Of a DNA stretch of 64,000 nucleotides, positions 1-64,000 are shown in pieces (within the stretch, counting starts at the first letter, position 1; the number at the start of each line of letters is the position of its first letter). The stretch is taken from assembly GCF_006345805.1 (NCBI RefSeq), contig NC_043018.1, positions 29,946,001-30,010,000 of the forward strand. Direction: 5' to 3'. A program made the position numbers and the translations under genes. A model generated the notes under the pieces. The model saw only the letters and a program-made list of their open reading frames with translations. It made no database searches and was not told where the DNA came from. This DNA is from Octopus sinensis. Lineage: Eukaryota.

Positions 1-768
1 TAAACCTGTCGTGCTGTAAAAGACGCGTTCAGTTTCCAGTAACCAGGACCCTGCCTATGAGTCTTATCTAAGTCAAGTGTACAAGTCACAAACTTGTGAT
101 CTGTGTAACTGACTATATGAAATTGTGGACAACCTACACTATTTTTATCTATTGTCCTACAGAATACTCTATCTAAGTATGATCTGGACGACCCGATGCG
201 GTTACTCCATGTCCACATTGGCACATTCGGGTGGTCCAGTCGGTACCTGTCAGACAGTTGGAAACGTCTGAGCAGGTCTTTGAGGCATTTGCATCCCCTT
301 CTATTGCTATCTCTGCCCACGTAGTCTAGATGCGTGTCCAGGGTGGCATTCCAATCCCCCACTAAAAGTAAAGGACGAGACGTTCCCATGAAAGACTCGA
401 AAGAAATCTGGTCGGCCTGTTAAGGACGGAGCATAAACTGCTATCAGTCGAAAAGCACACTCATTGCTGCCATCGACATCCAAAACGACCAGCCTACCCT
501 CCGTGTCTAGGAAAATTGCTCTTACTTTGAGATCCAGACTCTTCCAGAGAAGCACCACGGTGCCACCTCCGCCCATTCTCGATAGACACGGAGAAAAATA
601 AATGTTGAAATGCGTACCGAAACTGTGCTGGAGTGCCCGCGAGCTGTGGAGTCTGGTCTCACTGATGGCTATGATATTCAGATTTAGTGACTTGATGTTA
701 TTTAACAGGTAGCCTTGTTTCTAAGGCGACCCCAAGCCATGTACATTTATACTGCCTATTCTGAGAAT
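1..768 (-). pseudogene. Copy A ORF2 N-terminus (APE endonuclease), disrupted
   Basis: GGGGTVVLL..AVYAPS..GRPDFFR matches 49/60 aa to copy B; ATG replaced by ATT, TGG replaced by TAG, and frameshifts. Confidence 0.85.
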
Positions 769-870
769 GTTACGATAAAAAATTGTGTTTTGCACACGAA
801 AAGAAAGTGCAAAAAAGGAAAGAGAGAGAGAAAAGGTTACTTGTTGTTCGAAAGTCCTTTGTTTTTCACC

Positions 871-3051
871 TCACAGTCTTCTTCCATGAGGTTTTTGTAT
901 AGTTTCTTTGATGAATATTTTTGAAACCTCCCTACTGCATGAGGGTAAAGAGATTTCAGGGTGCTGTATGTGTTCTGTTACGTGTATTATTTTAATGTGT
1001 TGTGGTGGTGTTGTGCGTGGCTGGTTATTTGTTTTTATGTCGTTTTCAGTTATGTTGCTGTTTGACCTAATGTGTTCCATTAGGTCGTGGTTGTTTGTGT
1101 TTATGGCTGTCAACATTGTTGGGGGGTTCGATGATGGTGTGTTTGTGTTGATGTGTTTGTTTTCTGTGGATGTTTTTGTTTCGGGAGTGGTGAATCTTCC
1201 TGCTTTGTTTGTTATCTTTTCTTTTCTTTTTTTCCCCTTTTTCTTCTCCCCCCCTGTGGCTATTTGCCAATCTTCTGTGTCTTCTTCGTCTAATGACAAA
1301 TCAGAGGAATCAGAGCTTGGAAGAGGGAAAATATTGGGGTCTATTGTAGACTGTGTTGATTTTGTTGTTGGTGTTGGTTGGTGAGTGTTAGGTTGTGGTG
1401 TATGCGGTTTTGGAGGTGGGGTGTGGGTATTTTGTGTTTGAGTGATTGTAGGTATTTTTGTGTTGTTTGGGGTGTCAATTTTGTGGGGATTTAGAGTAGT
1501 AATTGTTTCTTCATTTTCGATGAGTGTCTTTTTGGCAGTTGTCCTTGGTTTGGGAGTTGGTTTATTCTTGGTTGTTGTTGTTGTTGGTGTTGCTTCTGTT
1601 CTTGGTGCAGTTGGTGTGGTTGTTTGGTTGGTGAGGTTTTTTTGTTTTTTTTTCTGTGATTAGTCCTGTTTGTACAATTTGTGGTGTGGGTAGTAAAGCT
1701 GGCTTTTTTTGTTTTTTCCGGCTGCTGTTGTTGTTGCTGTTGTTTTCTTGCGGCATATTTGCAATATTTTTTTAGGTGTTGCTCACTGCCGCATATGTAG
1801 CAACGTGGTCTTCTGCCATCGACGACCACATACAACTTGTGGTCTTCTGATACACATATCTGGGTGGGCATTTTCTTTATGTCCTCTTGGTTTATATGTA
1901 GTAGAAATTCTACACTTTTTCCCACCCAGTTTTTGTGTTCCGTGACCGTAGTTTCTAAAATTGTGAAATCTTCCATTTTCACACATAAGGCCTTTACTAG
2001 CCATAGATTGTTTGCTATTTTTGGGACATTGTTTAAAGTGATCTTAGTCACTTTCTGTCCACGATAGCTTGGTGTTAGTTGAAGTTCATCTGAATGAAGA
2101 GTTAGCGTTGAGAAACGTCTTGCTAACTCTTCAGTGTGGAAGACCACTTGTATGTGTGCGAACTTGTTCCCCCAGGTCACATACTCTTTGTAGTTCCAGA
2201 TGGGTTTCAAGCATTTTTCGATTTTGCTTGTGTTAGCCTTCTCTGGACTTTTTGTTTTCTTATTAATTACTTTATATATAATAGTTCTTTTTTTTTTCAT
2301 TTTCTAATATTTCTTGTGATATGTTTATTTTTACTATACCATCTACTTCTGTTATTAAAATATTCGTATCTTTTATCTGCTGTGCAGTAAAATATACTGT
2401 TGTTTTTTTTTCTTTTATCGCCTCGGCGAAATTTGTTGTTGTTTTGTTATTGTTGCTGGTGGTGATGTTGTTGTTGGCTGCAGTTGGTAAAATCGGTGTA
2501 TTTGGTTTGATTGTGCAAGTAGGAAGGGGTGGAAAATTACTTGCGTAGTTTATCCCTGTATTCAAGCAGCTTTTGTCAATTTGTTTGGTGGTCACAGTTT
2601 TTTGTTTATTCCCTTCAGTTCTTGTTGTTGGAGTAGACAAGGTCTGAACGGGATTGCTGTTGTTGTTATTGTTGTTTTTGTTGTTGGCGGTGGTGTCAGT
2701 GGCAGAAGAGACAGCCGTGGCAGCAGATGTCGAAATGGTGGCGCAAATGTTGTTATTCTTGTTGTCATTGTTATTGTTGTTGTTGTTGGTAGTTGAGGTA
2801 GTGGATGAGGTGGCGGTGGTGGTGGTGGTGGAGGCGGTGGTGGTAGCAGTAGTAGTCCCGTTGTTGTTGTTGTTAGTGGTGGTGGTGACAGTGCTGTTAT
2901 CGCAAGTGGTTGCAGCGTTCACTGCCACGTCATTCAGGTTTGCACTTTGCGTGCATGAGTTCTTTTTTTCTTCTCCTAGCGTTTCCAGACTAGGAGAATG
3001 TTGGTCGATAAAGGAACGCGACCAGCGTTCTACAATACAATTTCTCGACAT
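871..3051 (-). pseudogene. Copy A ORF1 (Thr/Asn-rich N-terminus, RRM-like core, CCHC zinc knuckle), split by frameshifts
   Basis: ORFs 2272-3051, 1491-2300 and 871-1299 align in order with the ORF1 pieces of B and C; one break is at an A homopolymer. Confidence 0.8.
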
Positions 3052-3246
3052 TTTCGAAATGTCGAGAAAAATTACACAAATTAAATAGGGTTGAAACTGC
3101 CCCTAGGGGCGAATTCCTCCCTTGGAAAAGCACTCAAACAAAAGTTGGGTGCCTTACATACCTTATTTACAAAAATGTACACAAAATATGGGCTATAAAT
3201 AGTCAAAATAAACGATTACCTTCGGAGCCGAAGTGACAGCACGTCC

Positions 3247-3248
<2 letters not shown>

Positions 3249-3336
<88 letters not shown>

Positions 3337-3375
3337 TGATAGATAGATAGATAGACAGATAATAGATAGATAGAT

Positions 3376-3416
<41 letters not shown>

Positions 3417-3587
3417 CAGATAGATAGATAGATAGATAATGATAGATAGATAGATAGATAGATAGATGATAGATAGATAGACAGATAAAGATAGAGATAG
3501 ATAGATGATAGATAATAGATAGATAGATAGATAGATAGATATAGGAATAGATAGATAATAGATAGATAGATAGATAGATAGATAGAT

Positions 3588-3629
<42 letters not shown>

Positions 3630-3712
3630 CAGACAGAGGGACTGACGGAGAGACGGACAGGGAGACCGGCAGAACGACAGACCGACAGGCAGGCAGATAG
3701 ATAGATAGATAA

Positions 3713-3762
<50 letters not shown>

Positions 3763-3782
3763 TGATAGATAGATAGATAGAT
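3249..3782. repeat. (GATA)n microsatellite (~530 bp, some GACA variants) between the 3' end of B and the 5' end of A
   Basis: Directly visible. Confidence 0.98.
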
Positions 3783-4075
3783 AACTTTTTATTGTAGCCA
3801 CACAGGGCTAAACACAGAATAAAAATGGACGAAATACAACGTAGAATTTTTTCTTTTCGAGGTGGGATGGGTGGGGCACAAAAAAAAAACACGTTTGATC
3901 AATAGGGATCTGTGGGTTGTGTGGTGTATAAAAAAGCAATATATATATATATAAGGTTCACAGTTTAGGTGTAGCCTTGGAAAGAAAAAAACCTACAAAA
4001 AAGACCAAGGTCACCTCAGACAATTCGAAAAAGAACACATGAGTAAGTCGCCTTACTTCTCGTTGTCTCTTTTGG

Positions 4076-7000
4076 TTACAGATTTATGCTTAAAATAGTG
4101 TCGTCTTTCATACTGACCATTTTTGCCACTTTTACCCACTTTTTATTAAAACATTCGTTCGACAAAGCCTTCCTCTCTATTCTCATCCTCCTTTTCAAGT
4201 GGTACTTGAAAAAGTTGACGAGAGGCTGACCAGAGAGGAAGGTGTTTGTTTGCAGTCCTTTCAAACGCGTCCACCACACACATTCTTTCGCCATAGCCAT
4301 CAGCGTAACGAAAACCGTTTTCCCTTCCCGTTTAAAGGAAGGTGGTGGAACAATATTCACGATAGACTCGGCCGATAGGCGAGCCTGACCTACACGTGAC
4401 AACAGCTGTTCGACGAAGGACCACAGCTCTGAAATATCTGGACACTGCACGAGTGCGTGCAGAACGGTTTCGTCGCTCTGACCGCAGCTCGGGCAGGTCG
4501 GTCCGGTGATGGTTTTCGAACCGTGTCTGTAGCTCTTCTCTCGAACAGGTAGTGCGTCTCGATAGCACTGCCAAGCCAGGGATTTCTGAAAGTTATCCAT
4601 AGGCCCCGGCCCGAACGTCGTCCTGAACAGGCGGGTTAGGAATTCTTCGTCAACGCCCAGGTTTGCCCCGAGTGTGTCGTCGGACCTCCCCTCCACTAGT
4701 CCTCTATAGAACGCTTTAGTCGTTTGTAAGTTGCACAAGTTTGACCCCGGTCGGCGAGCTGCTGTAGAGCTTGGCGACACTCTCAGTGCCAATTGCCCAG
4801 TTTCGGTCTCTTTTTGATCCACGTTTGCAGTTCGGTCAGTGAGACGAGCTGCGGGAAGTCGCGCCTCACAAACGGCGCCCACACCTGTTCACCGTCGTCG
4901 ATGAAGTTCCAGAGATGTCGCAGTCTCAGCGCATGCCTGCGCATCATCAACCACGGCATGCCCAGTCCTCCATTCAACGGATGTTGACAGCAAATGGACT
5001 TCCTCACCATCGGAACGCCACCCTTCCACAGGAAGCGGAAGAGTATGCGTTCCAGTTTGGTGATGGTGGCGTCGACACAAGGTGCGACGGTCAGGCGGTA
5101 ATCGATGACGGATGCGATGTACGCATTCGCCACCTCCACCCGGCCTTTTAGAGACAGCTTTCTCTCGGCCCATGTTTGGCTGAGAGCGACCACTCTACTC
5201 GTGATCTCGTCCCACTTCTTATCCATTTGGAGGTCCGGACTGAACCAGACCCCGAGCAATTTAACCGGTCCGTCCGTCCAGCGTCCCACTACTGAGCCGC
5301 AGTCGGACGGCATGGGCTTGCTTCTCCAGGTGCCGAGTAGCAAACCCACTGACTTTTCCGGGTTAATCTTTGCTCCCGTCACCGTTTCATATTTTCTTAG
5401 TGTCTCGCCTATCATCATGATGTGTTTGTCGCTCGACACTATGACGGTGACATCTTCCGCATATGGCGACACGCTCGTCCCGCAACCCAGTTCCCGTGGG
5501 ATGCCCCTCAGTGTCGCCAGCTTCCGCAGTAGCGGCTCGAGAGTCAATACATACAGAAGCGCCGACAGGGGACACCCCTGACGGACCGAACGCATGATGT
5601 CAAACGGTTTCGACAGGTGACCGTTCACCCGAATCACCGATCGGATGCCGCTATACAAGGCAGCGATCCAACCGCGGAAGACGGGACCGAAGCCAGCCGC
5701 CCTGAGGACGGCCGCCAAGTACCGATGGTCGACCCTATCGAAGGCTTTAGACTGATCCAAATTTATCAGCGCCCCACACATGCCAGGATCCTTAACTACC
5801 CTGTCCACAATGTAGCGCATCAGATGGAGGTTGTCATGTATGGTTCTACCCGGCACGGCGCATGTTTGCGCCCTGTCGACCAGTTTACCAATGACAAGCG
5901 CCAACCTCTCGGCTATTACTTTGGCCAAAATTTTCAAATCTGCGTTGAGTAGAGTGATGGGCCTAAAATTATCTATAAAATTCCCCTTGTTTGAGTCTTT
6001 CTTCAGCAACGTCACTACACCTCGGCTCACGAAACCGGGGATTCTCCCGTTTTGTTGCTAGTTGCAGTAGACTGATGCCAAGAGGTCGCCAAACAAGTCT
6101 GGCATTCGACAATACAGCTCGTAGGGTAAACCATCCAATCCAGGCGACTTATCCCTCGCGCAGCCCGCCATCGCATCCCACACGTCAGCGGCTGTGATGG
6201 GACTTTCACAACACTCCGCTTCTCTTGCCGAGAGCCGCGGCAGGTCGGTCAGGTAGGCACTGAAATCCATCCCGCGTTCCGACCCACCACCATCGCACCA
6301 AACAGTCGAGCAAAGTGCTGTTGAAAGGCCTCACACATCCTTTCGGGTTCGAGTAAACTGCATCCCTGTTGATCTATTAGAGACCGAATGGTTGATCTGT
6401 TGCCACGCTGCGCCTCCGCTACCCGGGCCTCTCGCGCAGCTTCGATCCCTTCGTTCCTTAAGGCACGCATTTTAGCTCTGACGACGCAACCTTCGTGCTT
6501 GGCGTTGAGGGGTTGGTCGAGGGCCATCCTCGATGCCAGCACGTTGGTTGCGCTGCCAGTGGTAAGTGCCTCTTCTAGTTTCTTAACTAAGTCTCCCTCT
6601 ACTCTATTTCGTTCTATCGCTAATTCCTTGCTAAACCTAATTGATTCCGATTTTATTGCCATTTTCAGGGCGTACCACCAGCGGTTGTTGACGACGGCTC
6701 CCGTCAGCGCCCTCTTAATTAACTCGCTAATCCGGTTCCTGTAAACCTGTCGCGCTAACAGCGACGTGTTCAGTTTCCACTAACCGGGACCCTGCCTATG
6801 TGTTTTATCTAAGTCGAGCGTACACGTAACAATTTTGATCTGTGTAGCTGACTATTTAAATTGTGGACATCCACACTATCCCTATCCGCTGTCCTGCATA
6901 GAATTCTATCTAGATAAGATCTCGACGATCCGACGCGATTTGTCCAAGTCCACGTTGGCACGTTCGGATGGTCGAGTCGGAACCTGTCAGACAAATGGAA

Positions 7001-7522
7001 ACGTCTGAGCAGGTCTTTGAGGCTCTTACACCCCCTTCTATTCCTATCCCTTCCCACATAATCTAGATGTGTGTCCAAGGTAGCGTTCCAATCCCCTACT
7101 AACAGTAAAGGTCTAGACGTACCCAGGAAAACCTCTAGACGTCTGAAGAAATCCGCCCGGCCCGTTAAGGACGGTGCATAAACTGCCATCAGACGGAATG
7201 CACACCCATTTCTGCCATCCACGTCCAAGACAACCAGCTTACCCTCCGGGTCTAGGAATATTGCTCTTACTTTTACATTTAGACTCTTTCGAAAAAGTAC
7301 CGCAGTACCTCCACCACCCATGTTCGGCAGACAGGGAGAAAAATAAATGTCAAATCGATTGCCAAACATGGACTCGAGGGCCCGCGGCTTACTGAGTCTG
7401 GTTTCATTGATAGCTACTATATCAAGGTCCAGTGACTTGATGTCGTTTAGAAGGTAACCTTGCTTCCAAGCCGACGCCAAGCCACGCGCATTCACACAAC
7501 CTAATTTAAGCATACTTGACAT
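4076..7522 (-). pseudogene. Copy B ORF2 (APE endonuclease + reverse transcriptase + C-terminal zinc-binding domain)
   Basis: NARGL, ETRL, GDWN, YLDRI, SDHK-like APE motifs; FRPITLLNADLK, DQSKAFDRV, QGCPLS RT motifs; YADD mutated to YAED; CPSC..ETVLHALVQC; frameshifts near 6830-6880 and 6270, stops at 6058 and 4783. Confidence 0.95.
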
Positions 7523-7587
7523 TTACGAAAATTGTGTTTTACACACTATATTAGAAGAGACAAGAGGCAAGAAGGGAGGTCACTTAC

Positions 7588-9482
7588 TCATTTTAAAAGT
7601 TTCATTTTTTCTTCTTCTTCTTTTTGTTTGTTTTTGATGAGGTGTTTGTATAGTTTTTTCGACAGGTATCGTTGATACCCGCCTACCGCATTCGGAAATA
7701 TTGTTTTCAGTATGTGGTGTTGTGCTTGTGTTATGTGTAAAATTCTGATGTGTTTCGGTGGTGTGGTGTGCGGATGATTGTTTGTCTTAAAGTCATCTTC
7801 ACAGATGACCATGTTAGATTTGATGTAGTCCATTAATTCTTTATTGTCTGTGTCTATTGCAGTTAGTTGTGTGTGTGGTTTTACGGGTTCATTACTTTTT
7901 TGATTGTCTAGGGGGATGTTGTCCGGAGTTAGATATCTCCCTGCTTTACTTCCTTGTTTGGTGGGTTTTTTGGATCTTTTTCTTTTACCCCCTGTGGCTA
8001 TTTGCCATTCCGTCGAACTTTCGTCGTCCGACGTATTAGTATGGGGTAGAGGCAAAACATTTGCATTACTATGTATGCTTGTATAAATTGTTGATGTTTT
8101 GTGCGGTGTTTGTGTTGTTGTGGTGTTAGGGGTAGCATTTGTCTTCTCGTCAGTTTTTCTGTCTTTTTAATTGTCGTCCTGGTGTGGGTGTGGGTCTATT
8201 TTTTGTTAATTCAACAGGTTTAATTGGTTGTGAAGTCAACGGTGATTGTGTTGGTACTGTTTCTTTTCTTGGTGATGTTGTCGGGTTTGTTCGTCGTTGG
8301 TTGTTGTTTTTCTTGGCATTGTTCCATAATTGAGTGTGTTGGTGTTGGTGTTGGCAACAAAGGGATTTTATTTGTTTTCTGATTTGTTCTTTCTTGTTTT
8401 TTCTGTACCAGATCGCACTTGGCAATCAAATGTTCGGGGCTGCCACATTTGTAGCATCTAGGCTTTTTGCCTTCTGCCACAACATATAGGCATTGCCCAT
8501 TCTCCAAGTGGATCTTATCCGGTAGGCTCTCGATAGAGGCCCCCTCAATCTGGATGGTCACCACTATTGTTTTCCCACCCCAAATGTCGCCAGGGTACAC
8601 GGCGGTCTCCAAAATATTAATATTTTTTAAATGGTAACAGATTTCCCCTGTTATCCATTTGTTAGGAAGCTCGGGAGGTACATTTTTAATAGTGATTCGA
8701 CTCACTCTCTGGTTTTTGTAGTATGGGACCATGATGATTTCATCATTTCCCAGAGACTCAGTAGAGTGAGCTTTTGCCACTTCCTGGTTAGGGAAGCGGA
8801 CCACTACTGTGTTAAACTGGGGACCCCAGTTTATATACTCTTTTTCTTTCATTATGTTTTTTAAACATTTTTCCACATCAGTTTTTGTAATCTGTTCATT
8901 TAGATTTTTGTTTTTTCTAATAATTTTATATACAATTCTCTTATTTTCTATTTCTTGCTTTATGTGTTGAGGTGTATGCAGCACTAAATCTTGTCCACGG
9001 GTTGTAAAGAGAGCTCTAGTTTCTATGAGCTCTTCATTTGTGAATGTTACTATTTCTTTCTTCTGGCGAAGAGTGTCTGCGAAATTTACTGTTGTTGATT
9101 TTTTTTGTATTAACATCTTTACTATTAGATAGTTCATTTTTATTCTTGTTCTTGTTGTTGCTGTTTTTTTTTGTCAATAGTTTTCGTGCGAGTTTTTTTT
9201 TTTATCATTTATGTTGGTCGTGGTAGTGGTGGTGGTGGTGGTGGAGGTTGTGGTGGAGGTGGTGGTGGTAGCAGTAGTAGTCTCGTGGTTGCTGTTGTTA
9301 GTGGTGGTGGTAGCGGTGGTGACAGGGCTGTTACCGCACGTGGTTGCAGCGTTCATTTCACCGATATTTATATTTGTACTTGGCGCGCGGACGTTCTTTT
9401 TTTCTCCTATTGTTTCCAAACTAGGAAAATGCTTGTCAATAAAAGAACGCGACCAGCGTTCTACAATAAAATTTCTAGACAT
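7588..9482 (-). pseudogene. Copy B ORF1, frameshifted
   Basis: Pieces 9174-9482, 8220-9137 (CYKCGSPEHLIAKC knuckle) and 7588-8055; several breaks lie at A homopolymers. Confidence 0.85.
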
Positions 9483-9678
9483 TTTCTAATGTCAAGAAGA
9501 AAATTACAGAAATGAAATGGGGTTGAAACTGCCTCTAGGGGCGAATTCCTCCCTTGGAAAAGCACTGAAACGAAAGTTGGGTGCCTTACACAACTTATTT
9601 ACAAAAATGTTCACAAAAATTGAGCTATAAATAGTCAAAATAAATGATTACCTTCGGAGTCGAAGTGACAGCACGTCC

Positions 9679-9692
9679 ATAGACAGACAGAC

Positions 9693-9760
<68 letters not shown>
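9679..9760. repeat. (GACA)/(GATA)n at the 5' junction of copy B
   Basis: Directly visible. Confidence 0.97.
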
Positions 9761-11882: not shown

Positions 11883-11918
<36 letters not shown>

Positions 11919-12103
11919 TAAGCAATAAGGGTTTAGCAACGAGTTGCCTTACCACATACCGAATTTAGAAATAGCAGTCAAAGGGTTATAGCTATTTCTT
12001 CTACTAAAAAGGGAGATCTCAGTAAAAACAGCATTTGGAAGGCAGACACAAACAGGTAAGAGAGAATGAATTGACTGCAATCTATCATACATTTTTTTAG
12101 TTA

Positions 12104-12217
12104 TCCACGGACGTACGTTTCGAAATCAAGTCTTAAGGAAAGCATAAGAACTAAATATTAAATATTAAATAATAAATAATTCTATCTTACCGAAACTTCT
12201 TTTCTCTTCAGCGTAGA
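12104..12217 (-). ncRNA. Mirror copy of the intron-split hammerhead in the inverted arm (intron 12132-12190)
   Basis: Reverse complement of 12528-12641. Confidence 0.78.
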
Positions 12218-12527
12218 ATACTATAATCATAAAAGCCTCGAATGAGGCCTTTACATGCCGAAGACTACTTGGTGTAATTGATAATTTTTCCAAATTAATT
12301 AATTTCACCCTTCATTATTACGGATAACCATATTTTATCTCAGTAGATGACCACAGCATCTTGTTTTGGCTACACGCGGGTGGGAAGGGGCTGTTGACAC
12401 AATCGTTTCATTCACAAATTGAATTCGGTGATACCAGTTGCGGATTCTAGCTCGCTCTGATACTGAGTGGAGTTGGTGCCTTCTGGTATCTCAAAATTCA
12501 ATATATAATCATTTATGATTATAGTAT

Positions 12528-12641
12528 TCTACGCTGAAGAGAAAAGAAGTTTCGGTAAGATAGAATTATTTATTATTTAATATTTAATATTTAGTTCTTA
12601 TGCTTTCCTTAAGACTTGATTTCGAAACGTACGTCCGTGGA
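12528..12641 (+). ncRNA. Type I hammerhead ribozyme with a putative 59-nt intron (12555-12613) in loop II
   Basis: Stem I TCTACG/CGTGGA; CTGAAGA core; stem II GAAAAGAAGT/ACTTGATTTC; GAAA; stem III ACGT/ACGT; GTC cleavage triplet (cut after 12635). Confidence 0.8.
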
Positions 12642-12985
12642 TAACTAAAAAAATGTATGATAGATTGCAGTCAATTCATTCTCTCTTACCTGTTTGTGTC
12701 TGCCTTCCAATGCTGTTTTTACTGAGATCTCCCTTTTTAGTAGAAGAAATAGCTATAAACCTTTGACTGCTATTTCTAAATTCGGTATGTGGTAAGGCAA
12801 CTCGTTGCTAAACCCTTATTGCTTAGTATTACTTAAATTTTCCTCGAATGAGGCTTTTACATGCCGAAGACTACTTGGTGTAATTGATAATTTTTCCAAA
12901 TTAATTAATTTCACCCTTCATTATTATATATATATATATATATATATACTTACCACACAGCCACCCCTGTGCCTATATATATATA

Positions 12986-13318
12986 GGCGCAGGGGTGGCT
13001 GTGTGGTAAGTAGCTTGCTAACCAACCACATGGTTCCGGGTTCAGTCCTTGGGTAAGTGTCTTCTGCTATAGCCCCGGGCCGACCAATGCCTTGTGAGTG
13101 GATTTGGTAGACGGAAACTGAAAGAAGCTTGTCGTATATATGAATATATATATGTGTGTGTTTGTGTGTCTGTGTTTGTCCCCGGTTCGGCAAATAGAGA
13201 CCGATAGAATAAGTACTGAGCTTACAAAAAGAATAAGTCCCGGGGTCGAGTTGCTCGACTAAAGGCGGTGCTCCAGCATGGCCGCAGTCAAATGACTGAA
13301 ACAAGTAAAAGAGTAAAG
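12986..13318 (+). mobile_element. tRNA-derived SINE, family 1 (possibly Meta-domain type)
   Basis: Head GGCGCAGG.GTGGCTGTGTGGTAAG with A/B-box-like motifs; body GGCCGACCAA.GCCTTGTGAGTGGATTTGGTAGACGGAAACTG; many copies in the window. Confidence 0.85.
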
Positions 13319-17247: not shown

Positions 17248-19336
17248 TCATCATCATCATTGTTCGACCGTGGTCGAGACAATGGAATTTACCATGTTGC
17301 GCCAGACTTCACGGTCCATCATAGCATTACGGAGGTCCTGTTGCTGGATGCCTGTATCCCTGGAGATTACATCAGGGTAGGAGAGTGTGCGCCCTCTGGT
17401 GTTGCGAGTAGATGGCTTCCAGAGGAGAAGAGTAGAAATTACTTCTTTTTCAGCTCTAAAACAATGTCCAGCAAACTGGACTCTCCTACCCTTCACAAGA
17501 GATGACACAGGTGGTAATTTCCCATATATTTGCATTTTAGTTGGATGGCGCCTCCACGAGAGATTTTGAGCTCTCATAAGGAGGCGAGTGTAGGTTCCAT
17601 CCAACCGCCTCTCAAGCTTCTTTGATAACGTCCAGGTTTCTGAGCCATATAGTAGGATTGGTTCGACTGTGGCTTTGAGTATTTCAAGTTTGAAGTCTCT
17701 ACTTAGATTTGATGACCAGATCTTATGCATGTCATTACAGGCTGACCAGGCCATACCCTTTCTAGTTAGAAAGTCTTTTCCAGATGATGATATGTATGAC
17801 CCAAGATATTTATAATCAGAAACCATATTTAAAGGTGCACTGTTGAGAGTGTGGATGATGCAATCACTGTTGGACAGGCACTTGTTTATGTATTCAGTTT
17901 TGGTCTCATTAAGGTAAAGACCTACACAATTTGAGGCTTGTTCAAGAGATTGTAAAAGAGACTGGGCATTGGAGAGAGAATCACTGATAAGAGCGATGTC
18001 GTCAGCAAAGTCAGTGTCTGTCAAGTACTCAGCTGGGTGTCTGGAACTTCTTCTTGGTTTTATTTCAAAGCCCTTGCCAGAGATAGTATCAACTGACATA
18101 CGTAGCACATAATCAACAACAATGATGAAAAGAAATGGGGCGAGTGTGTCTCCCTGCAGTATTCCGGCCTCGATCGAGAAAGATGATGTTTCTCCATCAG
18201 GGGTTAAGATGGTTGAAGACGTATCTGTGTAGAGGACCTTGATGGCAGAAATAATTTTGTCTGGTATCCCATAGAGCTTAAGGATTTCAAACATCTTGCA
18301 CCTATCTACAGAATCGAACGCTTTAGAAAAGTCTACAAATACCATTGCAAGATCGCGATTAAATGCTTTTGATTCTTCAATAAGTCTGCGCAGGCATAGT
18401 ATCTGGCTCAGCGTTGAGCGCCCATGTCTGAATCCATTTTGGTTCTTTCGGAGCAAAGGTTCAACAAAAAGGACAAGACGATTTAGGATCAGTTTGTTGT
18501 ACAGTTTTGCAGCAATTGACATTAGAGATATGCCCCTGTAGTTGGTGACGAGGGAGAAATCGCCTTTTTTGGGTATTGGAATGATTTGAGACTGGTGCCA
18601 AATCTTTGGAGCGACAAAGGTGGAAAGTGTGTGGTTGCAGAGGTTAAGCAAAAGTGTGTGAAATCTATCATCCTTCCAAATCACAGCCGAAATGTTGTCG
18701 GGACCAAATGCTTTCGAGGCTTTTAGTTGCTTGGTGGCTGCTGTTAGTTCAAATATGGTAAAAGGGGAGGTGTTGCTGTCCAGCGTGTCTGATATAGGCA
18801 CACTTGGGAGAGTGGGGTTATCAGGGATTTTAGCATTCTTCCCAAGGAGGTTTTTAAAATGGGTTGACCAATTTTCTAAACGCTTCTTAGCTGATCCCCC
18901 TTTAATTCTAATTGATGACCCAGAATTTTTGCCTGATAGGTCTTTGATGGATTTCCAGGCGAGATGGTGTTTTTTACTAATGTGCTCTTTCGATAGTTTA
19001 CTAATTTTGCCATTGATAAATTCGACCTCGGCGTTCAAGTAAGCCTCATCAAGATTCTTCCTGGCAGCTATGAGTTGGATCTTCAGTGACTGGGATGGAG
19101 AACGGTGGTAAGCTAGTGATATAGACTTTAGATGGTTTCTGGCTTCGATGACATTTGGGGAATTAGAAGGTTTGCTCTGGCCCCTACTCTTCCTTTTGGG
19201 AAGAGCAGCCAGTGCAACTTCCTCTGTTGATTTGATGAGGCTGCTGTATACTTCCTCAATGTTCTCAGCATCTATTTCAGAAGTAGACAGAGATTGAAAT
19301 TTGTTATAGACCTCAATAGTAAATTGTTTGGACATA
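17248..19336 (-). mobile_element. 5'-truncated RTE/RTEX-type LINE, young, with 14-bp TSD
   Basis: TSD TCAAACTATGTTCA at 17234-17247 and 19337-19350; (TGA)n tail starting at the stop codon. Confidence 0.92.
17257..19335 (-). CDS. Uninterrupted 692-aa reverse transcriptase ORF (endonuclease removed by truncation)
   Basis: YRGISLMS, QNGFR, DFSKAFDSV, GILQGDTLAP, FADD, YLGS, LLYGSETW, FAGHC motifs. Confidence 0.85.
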   Translation of the reverse strand: MSKQFTIEVYNKFQSLSTSEIDAENIEEVYSSLIKSTEEVALAALPKRKSRGQSKPSNSPNVIEARNHLKSISLAYHRSPSQSLKIQLIAARKNLDEAYLNAEVEFINGKISKLSKEHISKKHHLAWKSIKDLSGKNSGSSIRIKGGSAKKRLENWSTHFKNLLGKNAKIPDNPTLPSVPISDTLDSNTSPFTIFELTAATKQLKASKAFGPDNISAVIWKDDRFHTLLLNLCNHTLSTFVAPKIWHQSQIIPIPKKGDFSLVTNYRGISLMSIAAKLYNKLILNRLVLFVEPLLRKNQNGFRHGRSTLSQILCLRRLIEESKAFNRDLAMVFVDFSKAFDSVDRCKMFEILKLYGIPDKIISAIKVLYTDTSSTILTPDGETSSFSIEAGILQGDTLAPFLFIIVVDYVLRMSVDTISGKGFEIKPRRSSRHPAEYLTDTDFADDIALISDSLSNAQSLLQSLEQASNCVGLYLNETKTEYINKCLSNSDCIIHTLNSAPLNMVSDYKYLGSYISSSGKDFLTRKGMAWSACNDMHKIWSSNLSRDFKLEILKATVEPILLYGSETWTLSKKLERRLDGTYTRLLMRAQNLSWRRHPTKMQIYGKLPPVSSLVKGRRVQFAGHCFRAEKEVISTLLLWKPSTRNTRGRTLSYPDVISRDTGIQQQDLRNAMMDREVWRNMVNSIVSTTVEQ

Positions 19337-22443: not shown

Positions 22444-22530
<87 letters not shown>

Positions 22531-22533
<3 letters not shown>

Positions 22534-22885
22534 AAAATAGTAAAGTGTGAAAAAACGACAGAAGGCTTAAATGTTAAAAAATATATATATTTGTGTCAAA
22601 ATGTCTGGAGAATATTGGAAAAATTTTTTTCCTTTCCTTAAAATGACATAATTTAAAAATTTTTAAAGAAATTACCGGTTTCGCGTGTAGCTTTTCAAAT
22701 TTCTTGTGACAAGAAATTTGAAAAGCTACACGCGAAACCGGTAATTTCTTTAAAAATTTTAAAATTATGTCATTTTAAGGAAAGGAAAAAAATTTTTCCA
22801 ATATTCTCCAGACATTTTGACACAAATATATATATTTTTTAACATTTAAGCCTTCTGTCGTTTTTTCACACTTTACTATTTTCTT
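22531..22885. repeat. 355-bp near-perfect palindrome (177-bp arms, 1-nt centre at 22708) in (TA)n
   Basis: Arms are reverse complements with one mismatch seen. Confidence 0.95.
22711..22750 (+). ncRNA. Minimal type I hammerhead, U3-A8 core variant (mirror copy 22666-22705 minus)
   Basis: Stem I AAGAAAT/ATTTCTT; core TTGAAAA; stem II GC-TACAC-GC; GAA; stem III ACC/GGT; GTA triplet. Confidence 0.6.
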
Positions 22886-22926
22886 ATATATTCACCCACG
22901 TGCTTTACCAAACAAACTTTCTTATC

Positions 22927-58863: not shown

Positions 58864-58907
<44 letters not shown>
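58835..58907. repeat. (TATC)n at the 5' junction of copy C
   Basis: Directly visible. Confidence 0.95.
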
Positions 58908-59103
58908 GGACGTGCTGTCACTTCGGCTCCGAAGGTAATCGTTTATTTTGACTATTTATAGCCCATATTTTGTGTACATTTTTGTAAATAAGTTGTGTAA
59001 GGCACCCAACTTTCGTTTGAGTGCTTTTCCAAGGGAGGAATTCGCCCCTAGGGGCAATTTCAACCCCATTCCATTTCTGTAATTTTCTTCTCAACATTAG
59101 AAA

Positions 59104-60979
59104 ATGTCGAGAAATTGTATTGTAGAACGCTGGTCGCGTTCCTTTATCGACCAACATTTTCCTAGTTTGGAAACGCTAGGAGAAGAAAAAAAGAACTCAT
59201 GCACGCAAAGTGCAAACATGAATAACGGTCGAATGAACGCTGCAACCACGTGCGGTAACAGCCCTGTCACCACCGCCACCACCACCACTAACAACAGCAA
59301 CCACGAGACTACTACTGCTACCACCACCACCTCCACCACCAACACCACCACCACCACCACCACCACCATGACCAACATAAATGATAAAAATAAAACTCAC
59401 ACGAAAACTATTGACAAAAACAACAACAACAACAAGAACAACAATAAAAATGAACTATCTAATAGTGAAGATGTTAATATAACAGAATTAACAAACCAAC
59501 AAATTTCGCTGACACTCTGCGTCAGAAGAAACAGATTATACATTTCACGAACGAAGAACTTTTAGAAACAAGATCTCTCTTTACAACCAGAGGGCAAGAT
59601 TTACTGCTACATACACCTCAACACATAAAGCAAGAAATAGAAAATAAGACAATTATTTATAAAATTATAAGAATAAACAAAAAACTAAATGAACAGATTA
59701 CAAAAACGGATGTAGAAAAATGTTTAAAAAACATAATGAAAAAAAAGAATACATAAACTGGGGTCCCCAGTTTCACACAGTAGTGGTCCGCTTCCCTAAC
59801 CAGGAAGATGCAAAAGCTCACTCTACTGAGTCTTTGGAAAATGATGATATCATCATGGTCCCATACTACAAAAATCAGAGAGTGAGTTGAATCACTATGT
59901 ACCCCCGATATTCCTAACAAATGGATAACAGGGGCAATCTGTTATCATTTGAAAACTATCAATATTTTGGAAACCGCCGTGTACCGAAACGACAATTGGG
60001 GTGGGAAAACTATAGTGGTGACCATACAGATTGAAGGGGCCTCTATCGAGAGCCTACCGGATAAGATCCACTTGGAAAATGGGCAAAGCCTATATATTAT
60101 AGCAGAAGGCAAAAACCTAGATGCTACAACTGTGGCAGCCCCGAACATTTCATTGCCAAGTGCGCTCTGGTACAGAAAAAACAAGAAAGAACAAATCAGA
60201 AAACAAATAAAAAACCCTTGTTGCCAACACCAACACCAACACACTCAATTATGGAACAATGCCAAGAAAAACAACAAACCAGCAAACAAACCCCAACAAC
60301 ATCACCAAGAAACGAAACAGTACCAACACAATCACCGTTGACGTCACAACCAATTCAACATGTTGAATCAACAGAAAATAGACCAACACCCACACCGAGG
60401 ACGACAATTAAAAAGACAGAAAACAGTGACGAGAAGACAAATTCTACCCCTAACACCACAACAACACAAACACCGCACAAAACATCAACAATTTTTACAA
60501 GCATATATATTTATGCAAATGCTTTGCCTTTACCTTCTACTGATACGTCGGACGACGAAAGTTCGACGGAATGGCAAATAGCCACAGGGGGTAAAAGGAA
60601 AAGATCCAAAAAATCCACCAAACAAGGAAGTAAAGCAGGGAGATATCTAACTCCGGACAACATCCCCCTAGACAATCAAAAAAGCAATGAACCCGTAAAA
60701 CCACACCCACAACTAACTGCAATAGACACAGACAATAAAGAATTAATGGACTACATCACATACAACACGGTCATCTGTGAAGATGACTTTAAGACAAACA
60801 ATCATCCGCACACCACACCACCGAAACACATCAGAATTTTACACATAACACAAGCACAACACCACATACTGAAAACAATATTTCCGAATGCGGTAGGCGG
60901 GTTTCAACGATACCTGTCGAAAAAACTATACAAACACCTCATCAAAAACAATACAAAAGAAGAAGAAGTAAAAAATTAA
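59104..60979 (+). pseudogene. Copy C ORF1, several small deletions
   Basis: Pieces 59104-59565, 59949-60341 and 60218-60979 align to B ORF1. Confidence 0.85.
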
Positions 60980-61057
60980 ACTTTTAAAATGAGTAAGTGA
61001 CCTCCCCTCTTGCCTCTTGTCTCTTCTAATGTAGTGTGTAAAACACAATTTTCGTAA

Positions 61058-64000
61058 ATGTCAAGTATGCTTAAATTAGGTTGTGTGAATGCGCGTGGCT
61101 TGGCGTCGGCTTGGAAGCAAGGTTACCTTCTAAACAACATCAAGTCACTGAACATGGATATAGTAGCTATCAGTGAAACCAGACTCAGTAAGCCGCGGGC
61201 CCTCGAGTCCATGTTTGGCAATCAATTTGACATTTATTTTTCTCCCTGTCTGCCGAACATGGGTGGTGGAGGTACCGCGGTGCTTTTTCGAAAGAGTCTA
61301 AATGTAAAAGTAAGAGCAATATTCCTAGACCCGGAGGGTAGGCTGGTTTTTTTGGACGTGGATGGCAGAAATGGGTGTGCATTCCGTCTGATGGCAGTTT
61401 ATGCACCGTCCTTAACGGGTCGGGCGGATTTCTTCAGACGTCTAGAGGTTTTCCTGGGTACGTCTAGACATTTACTATTAGTAGGGGATTGGAACGCTAC
61501 CTTGGACACGCATCTAGATTATGTGGGAAGGGATAGGAATAGAAGGGGATGTAAGAGCCTCAAAGACCTGCTCAGACGTTTCCATTTGTCTGACAGGTTC
61601 CGACTCGACCATCCGAACGTGCCAACGTGGACTTGGACAAACCGCGTCGGATCGTCGAGATCTTATCTAGATAGAATTCTATGCAGGACAGCGGATAGGG
61701 ATAGTGTAGGATGTCCACAATTTAAAATAGTCAACTACACAGATCACAAATTTGTTACGTGTACGCTCGACTTAGATAAAACACATAGGCAGGGTCCCGG
61801 TTACTGGAAACTGAACACGTCGCTGTTAGCGCGACAGGTTTACAGGAACCGGATTAGCGAGTTAATTAAGAGGGCGCTGACGAGAGCCGTCGTTAATAAC
61901 CGCTGGTGGTACGCCCTGAAAATGGCAATAAAATCGGAATCAATTAGGTTTAGCAAGGAATTAGCGATAGAACGAAATAGAGTAGAGGGAGACTTGGTTA
62001 AGAAACTAGAAGAGGCACTTACCACTGGCAGCGCAACCAACGTGCTGGCTGCGAGGATGGCCCTCGACCAACACCTCAACGCCAAGCACGAAGGTTGCGT
62101 CGTCAGAGCTAAAATGCGTGCCTTAAGGAACGAAGGGATCGAAGCCGCGCGAGAGGCCCGGGTAGCGGAGGCGCAGCGTGGCAACAGAGCCACCATTCGG
62201 TCTCTAATAGATCAACAGAGATGCAGTTTACTCGAACCCGAAAGGATGTGTGAGGCCTTTCAACAGCACTTTGCTCGATTGTTTGGTGCGAGTGGTGGGT
62301 CGGAACGCGGGATGGATTTCAGTACCTACCTGACCGACCTGCCGCGGCTCTCGGCAAAAGAAGCGGAGTGTTGTGAAAGTCCCATCACAGCCGCTGACAT
62401 GTGGGATGCGATGGCGGGCTGCGCGAGGGATAAGTCGCCTGGATTGGATGGTTTACCCTACGAGCTGTATTGTCAAATGCCAGACTTGTTTGGCGACCTC
62501 TTGGCATCAGTCTACTGCAACTAGCAACAAAACGGGAGAATCCCCGGTTTCGTGAGCCGAGGTGCAGTGACGTTGCTGAAGAAAGACCCAAACAAGGGGA
62601 ATTTTATAGATAATTTCAGGCCCATCACTCTGCTCAACGCAGATTTGAAAATGTTGGCCAAAGTAATAGCCGAGAGGTTGGCGCTTGTCATTGGTAAACT
62701 GGTCGACAGGGCGCAAACATGCGCCGTGCCGGGCAAAACCATACATGACAACCTCCATCTGATGCGCTACATTGTGGACAGGGTAGTTAAGGATCCTGAC
62801 ATGGGTGGGGCGCTGATAAATTTGGATCAGTCTAAAGCCTTCGATAGGGTCGACCATCGGTACTTGGCGGCCGTCCTCAGGGCGGCTGGCTTCGGTCCCG
62901 TCTTCCGCGGTTGGATCGCTGCCTTGTATAGCGGCATCCGATCGGTGATTCGGGTGAACGGTCACCTGTCGAAACCGTTTGACATCACGCGTTCGGTCCG
63001 TCAGGGGTGTCCCCTGTCGGCGCTTCTGTATGTATTGACTCTCGAGCCGCTACTGCGGAAGCTGGCGACACTGAGGGGCATCCCACGGGAACTGGGTTGC
63101 GGGACGAGCGTGTCGGCATATGCGGACGATGTCACCGTCATAGTGACGAGCGACAAACACATCAAGATGATAGGCGAGACACTAAGAAAATACGAAACGG
63201 TGACGGGAGCAAAGATTAACCCGGAAAAGTCAGTGGGTTTGCTACTCGGCACCTGGAGAAGCAAGCCCATGCCGTCCGACTGCGGCTCAGTAGTGGGACG
63301 CTGGACGGACGGACCGGTTAAATTGCTCGGGGTCTGGTTCAGTCCGGACCTCCAAATGGATAAGTACTGGGACGAGATCACGAGTAGAGTGGTCGCTCTC
63401 AGCCAAACATGGGCCGAGAGAAAGCTGTCTCTAAAATGCCGGGCGGAGGTGGCGAACGCGTACATGGCATCCGTCATCGATTACCGCCTGACCGTCGTAC
63501 CTTGTCCCGACGCCACCATCACCAAACTGGAACGCATACTCTTCCGCTTCCTGTGGAAGGGTGGCGTTCCGATGGTGAGGAAGTCCATTTGCTGTCAACA
63601 TCCGTTGTATGGAGGACTGGGCATGCGGTGGTTGATGATGCGCAGGCATGCGCTGAGACTGCGACATCTCTGGAACTTCATCGACGACGGTGAACAGGTG
63701 TGGGCGCCGTTTGTGAGGCGCGACTTCCCGCAGCTCGTCTCACTGACCGAACTGCAAACGTGGATCAAAAAGAGACCGAAACTGGGCGATTGGCACCGAG
63801 AGTGTCGCCAAGCTCTACAGCAGCTCTGCCGACCGGGGTCAAACTTGTGCAACTTACAAACGACTAAAGCGTTCTATAGAGGACTAGTGGAGGGGAGGTC
63901 CGACGACACACTCGGGGCAAACCTGGGCGTCGACGAGGAATTCCTAACCCGCCTGTTCAGGACGACGTTCGGGCCGGGGCCTATGGATAACTTCCAGAAA
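61058..64000 (+). CDS. Copy C ORF2 (APE + RT), open to the window end except for one TAG at 62522-62524
   Basis: 488-aa APE ORF; by manual translation the same frame resumes QQNGRIPG..., includes an intact SAYADDV, and has no further stop to 64000. Confidence 0.75.

What the first reader, a model, noticed from the sequence alone, without database searches (positions are those of the whole stretch)
12528..12641. Hammerhead ribozyme split by a spliceosomal-type intron: splicing would close stem II with a UUCG tetraloop
Seen: every conserved type I hammerhead core base is present (C3-U-G-A-A-G8-A9 at 12534-12540, G10.1-C11.1, G12-A-A-A at 12624-12627, GUC triplet at 12633-12635). Stem I has 6 bp (TCTACG/CGTGGA, one G-U); stem II has 4 bp, a 2x2 loop and 4 bp. 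Loop II holds 59 AT-rich nt starting G|GTAAGA and ending in a pyrimidine tract TTCTTATGCTTTCCTTAAG. Excising 12555-12613 gives AAGU-UUCG-ACUU, a clean tetraloop hairpin. In the unspliced RNA stem II can extend over the acceptor AG, so folding and splicing could compete. Established: Penelope-like elements carry hammerheads and can retain introns in their terminal repeats. Inference: a splicing-gated self-cleaving RNA in a non-autonomous element. I cannot check whether this arrangement is already published, and the unspliced form may also cleave.
Basis: partly seen in the sequence, partly recalled or inferred. Interest (0 to 1): 0.9.

Follow-up and report, generated by a model that had tools for sequence, protein, structure and literature searches.

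The report
Hammerhead ribozyme with long stem II
A real-looking self-cleaving hammerhead RNA motif sits in a small non-coding Penelope-style mobile element, but the stretch read as an intron is more likely a long AT-rich extension of one ribozyme stem, and removing it is predicted to misfold the ribozyme.

Summary
A complete type I hammerhead (HHR) core lies at 12528-12641(+). Rfam's Hammerhead_1 model picks exactly these ends, but at 16.7 bits, below its threshold of 34. A strict descriptor finds 2 hits against 0.005 per shuffled window.

The HHR sits in a roughly 1-kb non-coding insertion. Its layout is an inverted partial copy plus 1.14 direct copies of a 606-nt unit, flanked by (TA)n. That matches the published style of Penelope-like element (PLE) and retrozyme insertions.

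The intron reading is untested and leans against:
- GU/AG, a polypyrimidine tract and a branch-like site are present, at about 1-3% chance post hoc.
- The acceptor is the disfavoured AAG.
- 27 of the 59 nt are a 7-mer tandem repeat.
- The 83-nt stem II folds as one hairpin (z = -2.9) that buries both splice sites.

In the energy model the unspliced RNA holds the native HHR fold (P 0.94-0.99). The hypothetical spliced RNA misfolds (GUUUCGA/UCGAAAC, P 0.96-0.99) and sequesters the catalytic GAAA. So excision would not "close stem II".

No related copies or transcripts could be retrieved, so splicing itself remains untested. This looks like an ordinary new member of a known kind.

The parts
11886..11917 (.). 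(TA)n microsatellite flanking the insertion on the left
   Evidence: Sequence read; repeat families.
11915..12233 (-). Inverted partial copy (segment A') of the element. It is 99.4% identical to 12512-12829, with one 1-nt indel and one substitution, both outside the HHR.
   Evidence: Inverted repeats I1/I2; BLAST.
12104..12217 (-). Second, identical hammerhead copy, including the 59-nt insert
   Evidence: Descriptor scan; pattern match.
12236..12333 (+). Segment B, first copy. It is a short direct terminal repeat, pseudo-LTR-like, with 606-nt spacing to the second copy.
   Evidence: Direct repeat D3 at 93% over 98 nt; 98.8% over 85 nt.
12334..12511 (+). Segment C, the single-copy, GC-richer part of the unit. 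It contains a strong hairpin at 12414-12507.
12512..12829 (+). Segment A, direct copy, carrying the hammerhead
12528..12641 (+). Type I hammerhead motif. Stem I is 12528-12533/12636-12641. The core CUGAAGA is 12534-12540 and the core GAAA is 12624-12627. Helix III is the palindrome ACGUACGU at 12627-12634. C17 is 12635, so the predicted cleavage is between 12635 and 12636.
   Evidence: Sequence; Rfam alignment at 16.7 bits; descriptor against shuffles.
12541..12623 (+). Helix II, an 83-nt imperfect hairpin. It has 4 core-proximal bp, a 2x2 internal loop (12545-46/12618-19), 6 bp, then an AT-rich extension.
   Evidence: MFE -17.2 kcal/mol, z = -2.90, 3 of 200 shuffles as stable; pair probabilities 0.90-0.996.
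12555..12613 (+). I interpret it as the distal part of the helix II hairpin.
   Evidence: Signals and chance rates; splice sites paired with P 0.9-1.0; excision is predicted to misfold the HHR.
12567..12593 (+). Tandem repeat of the 7-mer TATTTAA, 3.9 copies, at the apex of helix II
   Evidence: Tandem Repeats Finder, 95% matches.
12842..12926 (+). Segment B, second copy, at the 3' end of the direct unit
12925..12950 (.). (TA)n microsatellite flanking the insertion on the right

Best explanation
The feature is a canonical-core type I hammerhead ribozyme belonging to a young, non-coding element of about 0.6 kb. A Penelope-like retrotransposon machinery (reverse transcriptase plus GIY-YIG endonuclease) inserted the element into a (TA)n microsatellite, giving the typical inverted plus partial-tandem layout.

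The 83 nt between G10.1 and C11.1 form an unusually long, AT-rich, imperfect helix II. After the canonical 4 bp there is a 2x2 internal loop where loop 2 normally sits. The helix then continues, and a 7-mer slippage array at its apex has lengthened it.

Inferred mechanism:
- In transcripts that carry two sense copies, or between two transcripts, the palindromic helix III (ACGUACGU) pairs intermolecularly. This forms the active dimeric hammerhead.
- Each copy cleaves after C12635. The product is a unit-length (606-nt), highly self-paired RNA, which may be circularised by a host ligase and copied back into DNA by a Penelope-like element.
- The long helix II stabilises the active fold against a competing GUUUCG/CGAAAC pairing.
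- The GU...polypyrimidine...AG look of the insert is a by-product of a purine-rich 5' arm pairing with a pyrimidine-rich 3' arm in AT-rich sequence.

What is shown: the motif, the anatomy, the predicted folds and the lack of coding capacity. What is inferred: cleavage, dimer action, circularisation and the mobilising element.

At this particular locus each strand carries only one sense copy opposite an antisense copy. The locus itself is therefore probably not self-processing.
For: - Core and helices are at the stated coordinates. Rfam Hammerhead_1 aligns end to end.
- The strict descriptor gives 2 observed hits against 0.005 per shuffled window.
- The architecture matches the published 'canonical metazoan' type I HHR: helix I of 6 bp, helix II of 4 bp, and helix III of 1-2 bp with a small palindromic loop, acting as a dimer (PMC4209133).
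- Monomer helix III pairs have P about 0.04. The dimer cofold is -55.8 against 2 x -21.7 kcal/mol, with an 8-bp intermolecular helix III.
- Helix II folds as a single hairpin with z = -2.90. Native pairs have P 0.94-0.99 and GAAA is unpaired with P 0.95-0.99 in the unspliced RNA.
- A 7-mer tandem array sits at the apex.
- The element anatomy is (TA)n flanks, a 319-nt inverted copy, and direct B repeats 606 nt apart. PLEs are reported to prefer (TA)n targets and to make complex tandem/inverted pseudo-LTRs (PMC8557442).
- No ORF is longer than 51 codons in any frame of the unit.
- The unit folded as a circle gives -161.2 against -123.7 +/- 6.4 kcal/mol for shuffles, z = -5.8, and keeps the HHR fold. 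This agrees with the 'highly self-paired' retrozyme RNAs of PMC7229834.
Against: - The Rfam score is below the gathering threshold (16.7 against 34).
- No homologous copies could be retrieved, so there is no covariation support for any helix and no evidence that the long helix II is a family trait rather than a peculiarity of this copy.
- The unit (606 nt) is longer than the ~170-400 nt reported for animal retrozymes. Only 1.14 direct units are present, so tandem organisation is not shown.
- No Penelope-like RT/EN gene is in the window.
- The intron-like signals are rarer than chance alone predicts, at 0.3-3%.
- Nearest-neighbour folding ignores tertiary contacts and proteins.
Confidence: 0.68

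Rival explanations
1. The 59 nt (12555-12613) are a genuine U2-type spliceosomal intron retained in genomic copies, as Penelope-like elements are known to do, and splicing changes ribozyme activity. Given the folding results, the direction would be the opposite of the reader's proposal. Unspliced RNA would be cleavage-competent, and spliced RNA would be locked in an inactive fold.
For: - G|GUAAGA is a strong donor.
- There is a UUUAAU branch-like site 26 nt upstream of the acceptor.
- 13 of 16 positions before the AG are pyrimidines.
- Such a combination is found at 0.31 per kb of strand in the window, about 0.03 per 83 nt. In composition-matched shuffles of the insert it appears in 0.3-1%.
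- PLEs retain introns, and the Penelope intron abuts its HHR so that spliced and unspliced forms have different HHRs (PMC4209133; PMC8557442).
Against: - The acceptor is AAG. By general knowledge of metazoan 3' splice sites this is the rare -3 purine case.
- An earlier UAG at 12592-12594 lies between the candidate branch point and the proposed acceptor.
- Donor, branch A and acceptor are all base-paired with P 0.9-1.0 in the predicted ensemble.
- Nearly half of the 'intron' is a 7-mer slippage array.
- The two arms are complementary, which an intron does not need (z = -2.9).
- Both retrotransposed copies kept the insert.
- No transcript or intronless copy was found, though none could be searched for in the source organism.
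Confidence: 0.08
2. The hammerhead is a decaying relic. A canonical short stem II/loop 2 was disrupted in this lineage by AT-rich slippage or a small insertion, and the motif no longer cleaves. The two identical copies simply record one recent insertion event of a dead or dying template.
For: - The 7-mer tandem array is inside the loop, and the genome is extremely microsatellite-rich.
- The Rfam score is below threshold.
- Core-proximal helix II is weak: one G-C plus three A-U pairs, then A.A/G.G mismatches.
- The locus has one sense copy per strand, and a 319-bp inverted repeat would dominate folding.
Against: - All 15 core positions, G10.1-C11.1 and A15.1-U16.1 are intact in a sequence whose flanks are AT-rich.
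- The insertion is young, with 2 differences in 319 nt between arms. That implies a recently active template.
- The extended helix is predicted to favour, not disturb, the native fold.
- The whole unit is strongly structured (z = -5.8).
Confidence: 0.2
3. The hammerhead-like motif is a chance match with no ribozyme ancestry.
For: It is below the Rfam gathering score, with E = 0.36 even on a 401-nt search.
Against: - The strict descriptor is expected at 0.005 per window.
- The Rfam alignment covers model positions 1-45 of 45.
- The architecture and the element context both match published PLE/retrozyme biology.
Confidence: 0.03

Closest known systems
Classical metazoan type I hammerheads of non-LTR retrozymes and satellite repeats (Cervera & de la Pena 2020, PMC7229834; architecture described in PMC4209133)
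   Same: - Type I topology and a complete core.
- Helix I of 6 bp, followed by an internal loop and a closing stem.
- Helix II with 4 bp before the loop 2 position.
- Helix III of 2 bp capped by a palindromic tetraloop, which implies dimer action.
- A non-coding host element whose RNA is predicted to be highly self-paired.
   Different: - Loop 2 is replaced by a 2x2 internal loop that opens into an extension of about 70 nt, AT-rich and containing a 7-mer array.
- The unit is 606 nt, against ~170-400 nt reported.
- Only 1.14 direct units plus an inverted copy are present, not a tandem array.
- No expression or circular RNA data exist.
Hammerheads in the pseudo-LTRs of Penelope-like elements, including the Drosophila virilis Penelope HHR next to the 75-bp intron (PMC4209133; PMC8557442)
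   Same: - The insertion style: (TA)n target and tandem/inverted partial copies.
- An HHR in the repeated non-coding part.
- A longer-than-usual helix II is reported for PLE HHRs (7-8 bp).
- There is a published precedent that an intron boundary can touch a PLE hammerhead, so that spliced and unspliced RNAs have different HHRs.
   Different: - No RT/EN ORF is present here.
- In D. virilis the intron ends at the 5' edge of helix I and is experimentally documented. Here the candidate lies inside helix II and is undocumented.
- PLE 'min-HHRs' lack helix III, whereas this one has the canonical palindromic helix III.
Discontinuous hammerhead with a very large loop in rodent Clec2 3' UTRs (cited in PMC3088659)
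   Same: The hammerhead halves are separated by a long insert, which has been discussed as a possible handle for regulation.
   Different: That insert separates the substrate and enzyme strands by hundreds of nt in a host mRNA. Here the insert is a simple hairpin extension of helix II in a mobile element.

Membership tests
Type I hammerhead ribozyme (Rfam RF00163) | Conserved core: C3-U4-G5-A6-N7-G8-A9, G12-A13-A14, and the cleavage triplet N-U-H with C17 | tested here: met
   CUGAAGA at 12534-12540, GAAA at 12624-12627 and GUC at 12633-12635.
Type I hammerhead ribozyme (Rfam RF00163) | Three helices around the core with G10.1-C11.1 and A15.1-U16.1, and helix I open-ended | tested here: met
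   Stem I has 6 bp. Helix II starts with G12541-C12623. A12627-U12634 closes helix III.
Type I hammerhead ribozyme (Rfam RF00163) | Score at or above the curated Rfam gathering threshold | tested here: not met
   16.7 bits against 34; no hit at gathering in the whole window. The deficit is attributable to the 79-nt insertion in helix II.
Type I hammerhead ribozyme (Rfam RF00163) | Helices supported by covariation among homologues | tested here: inconclusive
   Only two copies are available and their HHRs are identical. No relatives were found in viral or metagenome collections or through protein look-ups.
Type I hammerhead ribozyme (Rfam RF00163) | Site-specific self-cleavage | not testable with these tools
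   This needs in vitro transcription or mapping of RNA ends.
U2-type spliceosomal intron | GU...AG termini with a donor close to the consensus | tested here: met
   G|GUAAGA at 12554|12555 and AG at 12612-12613.
U2-type spliceosomal intron | Branch-site-like sequence and polypyrimidine tract upstream of the acceptor | tested here: met
   UUUAAU at 12583-12588. 13 of 16 positions in 12595-12610 are pyrimidines. All of these are predicted to be base-paired.
U2-type spliceosomal intron | Pyrimidine at position -3 of the acceptor (YAG) | tested here: not met
   The acceptor is AAG (12611-12613). An upstream UAG at 12592-12594 intervenes.
U2-type spliceosomal intron | Signals clearly beyond chance | tested here: inconclusive
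0.31 candidates per kb of strand in the window. In composition-matched shuffles of the insert, 0.3-1% carry such signals.
U2-type spliceosomal intron | Evidence of excision: spliced transcripts or precisely intronless copies | not testable with these tools
   No transcript data are reachable. The source genome is apparently absent from the searchable protein and contig collections: the best RTE relative is only 83-84% identical and comes from a marine metagenome.
Non-LTR retrozyme / non-autonomous Penelope-like element derivative | Carries a type I HHR and has no coding capacity | tested here: met
   The longest stop-free stretch is 51 codons in six frames of the dimerised unit. No PLE RT/EN motifs occur in the window.
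Non-LTR retrozyme / non-autonomous Penelope-like element derivative | Head-to-tail tandem copies, each with an HHR | tested here: not met
   Only 1.14 direct units (12236-12926) with a single sense HHR are present. The second HHR is in the inverted partial copy.
Non-LTR retrozyme / non-autonomous Penelope-like element derivative | PLE-type insertion anatomy: microsatellite target and tandem and/or inverted partial copies (pseudo-LTRs) | tested here: met
   (TA)n lies on both sides, there is a 319-nt inverted copy, and 85-98-nt direct terminal repeats are present. This was compared with the description in PMC8557442.
Non-LTR retrozyme / non-autonomous Penelope-like element derivative | Highly self-paired unit-length RNA, expressed as linear and circular forms | tested here: inconclusive
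   In silico the circular fold has z = -5.8. Expression and circularity are not testable here. The unit size of 606 nt is outside the reported ~170-400 nt.

The most novel reading that the evidence does not exclude
The 59 nt are a real intron lodged inside helix II of a hammerhead, and splicing acts as an OFF switch. Unspliced transcripts fold into the active ribozyme and are processed. Spliced transcripts flip into the GUUUCGA/UCGAAAC fold that hides the catalytic GAAA and so survive uncleaved.
Probability: 0.06. Interest if true: 0.8.

Novelty: new member of a known kind. Interest (0 to 1): 0.3.

Why it matters
As it stands, this adds one more hammerhead-bearing, Penelope-style non-autonomous element. 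The host is apparently a marine invertebrate genome. Its unusual feature is an 83-nt helix II that appears to have grown by 7-mer slippage and yet is predicted to stabilise the active fold.

That is a useful reminder that standard hammerhead models, such as the Rfam gathering threshold or descriptors with short loops, miss copies with long stem insertions. It also shows that AT-rich hairpins with purine-rich 5' arms mimic intron signals.

If the minority reading were true, and this were a real intron whose removal flips the ribozyme fold, it would be the first natural coupling of spliceosomal splicing to a small ribozyme's conformational switch. It would extend the single published hint from Drosophila virilis Penelope.

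Tried and rejected
- **Exact and gapped DNA pattern scans for relatives.** Two scans of viral contigs found nothing. Two scans of JGI metagenome contigs gave 0 hits and 9 hits. All 9 lack stem I complementarity and are unrelated chance matches.
- **Protein-route trick to fetch family copies through spurious ORFs.** The 47-aa ORF just downstream of the HHR has no word-sharing candidate among 5.8 billion proteins. I ran no further search on other short ORFs, because the RTE result shows the source genome is not represented.
- **Sampling the host genome through the RTE LINE ORF.** The exact ORF is not on record. Homologues top out at 83-84% identity and sit on contigs of about 3.5 kb from an ENA marine (Tara Oceans project) metagenome. 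That gives no usable genomic flanks.
- **Literature searches.** I searched for an intron inside a hammerhead stem and for the sequence itself. Only the D. virilis helix I/intron juxtaposition was found. A search for the neighbouring SINE sequence, meant to fix the organism, found nothing. The cephalopod attribution rests on my memory only.
- **Looking for a Penelope-like RT/EN in the window.** Motif scanning found none. The 692-aa RT ORF is RTE-like (FADD motif).
- **Chance motif.** Rejected on the basis of the shuffles.
- **tRNA-related primer sites or genes in or near the element.** None were found.

Full report
**Observation**

- TCTACG (12528-33) pairs with CGTGGA (12636-41).
- CUGAAGA occupies 12534-40.
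- G12541 and C12623 form the 10.1-11.1 pair.
- GAAA is at 12624-27 and GUC at 12633-35.
- The 59 nt at 12555-12613 begin GTAAGA and end TTCTTATGCTTTCCTTAAG.

Rfam's Hammerhead_1 model aligns to exactly these ends over all 45 model positions. It scores only 16.7 bits (gathering score 34), with E = 0.36 on a 401-nt search. Nothing in the window passes gathering. The 79-nt insertion in helix II explains the low score.

I wrote a strict descriptor requiring the core, stem I of at least 6 bp, stem II of at least 4 bp and a cleavage triplet. It finds two hits in the window, against a mean of 0.005 per dinucleotide-shuffled window (1 of 200 shuffles with any hit). The motif is real in the statistical sense.

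- The second hit is an identical copy on the minus strand (12217-12104). It lies in a 319-nt inverted repeat (11915-12233 against 12512-12829) that differs by one indel and one substitution, both outside the ribozyme.
- Helix III is the palindrome ACGUACGU, that is two base pairs closing a GUAC loop. Published work describes this as the hallmark of classical metazoan type I hammerheads that act as dimers (PMC4209133).
- In the energy model the monomer helix III pairs have P of about 0.04. Two molecules cofold to -55.8 kcal/mol, against 2 x -21.7, with an 8-bp intermolecular helix III.
- Beyond the 6-bp stem I there is a 2x2 internal loop and a 4-bp closing stem. Helix II likewise has exactly 4 bp before a 2x2 internal loop. 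These are the canonical positions of loops 1 and 2.

**Surroundings**

The layout is: (TA)n | inverted segment A' | B | C | A (with the HHR) | 12 nt | B | (TA)n, spanning 11886-12950. The two B copies are 606 nt apart, so the direct part is 1.14 copies of a 606-nt unit.
- No frame of the dimerised unit stays open for more than 51 codons.
- No tRNA-like feature is present.
- No Penelope-type RT or GIY-YIG motifs occur anywhere in the window.
- Folded as a circle, the unit reaches -161.2 kcal/mol, against -123.7 +/- 6.4 for shuffles (z = -5.8), and the hammerhead helices survive in that global fold.

Three properties are reported for Penelope-like elements: a preference for (TA)n targets, complex tandem/inverted pseudo-LTRs, and retention of introns (PMC8557442). 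Non-coding repeats with type I hammerheads that give highly self-paired RNAs are the animal 'retrozymes' (PMC7229834). A 2026 preprint argues that these derive from Penelope-like element termini.

The element fits that world, with three differences. It is longer than the ~170-400 nt reported. It is not in a tandem array here. And each strand carries one sense and one antisense ribozyme, so a read-through transcript would form a 319-bp duplex rather than a ribozyme.

**Is the insert an intron?**

The signals exist. There is a good donor (G|GUAAGA), a UUUAAU about 26 nt upstream of the acceptor, and a pyrimidine-rich run. They are uncommon by chance:
- GTRAG...Y(at least 12 of 16)...AG candidates of 45-120 nt occur at 0.31 per kb of strand in this window, or about 0.03 per 83 nt.
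- They occur in 1% of shuffles that keep each hairpin arm's composition, and in 0.3% of shuffles of the whole insert.

Several things weigh against an intron:
- These figures come from a post hoc observation.
- The acceptor is AAG, and an upstream UAG intervenes.
- 27 of the 59 nt are a 3.9-copy TATTTAA tandem array, in a genome saturated with microsatellites.
- The two ends of the 'intron' are complementary to each other. The 83-nt helix II folds as one continuous imperfect hairpin with z = -2.90 (3 of 200 shuffles as stable).
- A hairpin whose 5' arm is purine-rich necessarily has a pyrimidine-rich 3' arm. So the 'polypyrimidine tract' is not independent evidence.
- The donor GG and AAG, the candidate branch A and the acceptor AG are all paired with P 0.9-1.0.

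**Does excision close stem II?**

On paper it does. In the nearest-neighbour model it does not.
- The unspliced 114-mer has native helix II pairs at P 0.94-0.99, and G12-A13-A14 unpaired at P 0.95-0.99.
- The hypothetical spliced 55-mer has an MFE of -10.7 kcal/mol in a different fold. GUUUCGA (the end of 'exon 1' plus A12614) pairs with UCGAAAC and buries the catalytic GAAA.
- The native hammerhead fold of the spliced form scores -7.2 kcal/mol, and its pairs have P of about 0.01.
- This holds at 15, 25 and 37 C, with or without 18-nt flanks. The alternative fold has P 0.96-0.99.

The long helix is therefore predicted to protect the active fold. If splicing did occur, it would switch the ribozyme off rather than on. 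These are thermodynamic predictions that ignore tertiary contacts and proteins.

**Related sequences**

I could not obtain any.
- Exact and gapped pattern scans of viral and JGI metagenome contigs gave nothing related.
- The ORF-based route failed.
- The window's intact RTE-like RT ORF has its best relatives at only 83-84% identity, on short contigs from an ENA marine metagenome. Its exact sequence is not on record. The source genome is therefore evidently not in the searchable collections.
- Conservation of GT/AG, stem covariation, intronless copies and junction reads all remain untested.
- The organism is probably a marine invertebrate. The adjacent SINE-like repeat reminds me of octopus SINEs, but that is memory only and I could not confirm it.

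**Comparison with what is known**

I found no report of an intron inside a hammerhead stem. Longer-than-usual helix II is reported for Penelope-like element hammerheads. Relaxed descriptors with longer loops have been needed to find some of them.

**Verdict**

The feature is a hammerhead of the classical dimer-type architecture, in a young, non-coding, Penelope-style insertion, with an unusually long, slippage-expanded helix II.
- The intron reading gets about 8% and the specific OFF-switch version about 6%.
- The 'splicing closes stem II' mechanism is contradicted by the folding calculations.
- Novelty: a new member of a known kind.
- Interest: 0.3.

Noticed in passing
window 22525-22891: A near-perfect palindrome (183-nt arms, 1 nt between them, 99% complementary) is embedded in (TA)n on both sides. 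It could be a foldback insertion or another inverted-copy insertion into a TA microsatellite. My descriptor finds no hammerhead in it.
   Followed up: partly
window 1-9700 and 58864-63826: Two large copies of a LINE lie in inverted orientation at the two ends of the window, with arms 83-98% identical. One has an RVT_1 ORF at 4783-6030(-). The other has an Exo_endo_phos ORF at 61058-62524(+).
   Followed up: partly
window 17257-19335 (-): An intact 692-aa RTE-like reverse transcriptase ORF (FADD motif). Its best relatives in 5.8 billion proteins are only 83-84% identical and come from short contigs of an ENA marine metagenome (locus L001). This implies the source genome is not in that collection.
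   Followed up: yes
window 12947-13310: A 37-nt-arm palindrome (12947-13012) lies directly downstream of the element, followed by a SINE-like repeat. It resembles cephalopod SINEs from memory only. ARAGORN finds no tRNA there.
   Followed up: partly
window 12414-12507: A strong hairpin in the single-copy segment C of the element. Its weak mir-317 match (13.3 bits against a gathering score of 56) is almost certainly noise.
   Followed up: no
window 11915-12829: Any transcript crossing the whole insertion would contain a 319-bp, 99.4% complementary inverted repeat with a 278-nt spacer. That makes a long double-stranded RNA hairpin, a potential substrate for RNA editing or RNA interference.
   Followed up: no
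L005:2835-2936, L007:3263-3351, L009:12193-12285: Three metagenome contigs share a conserved segment of about 100 nt that matched the hammerhead core pattern by chance. It has no stem I pairing and is unrelated to the window element.
   Followed up: partly
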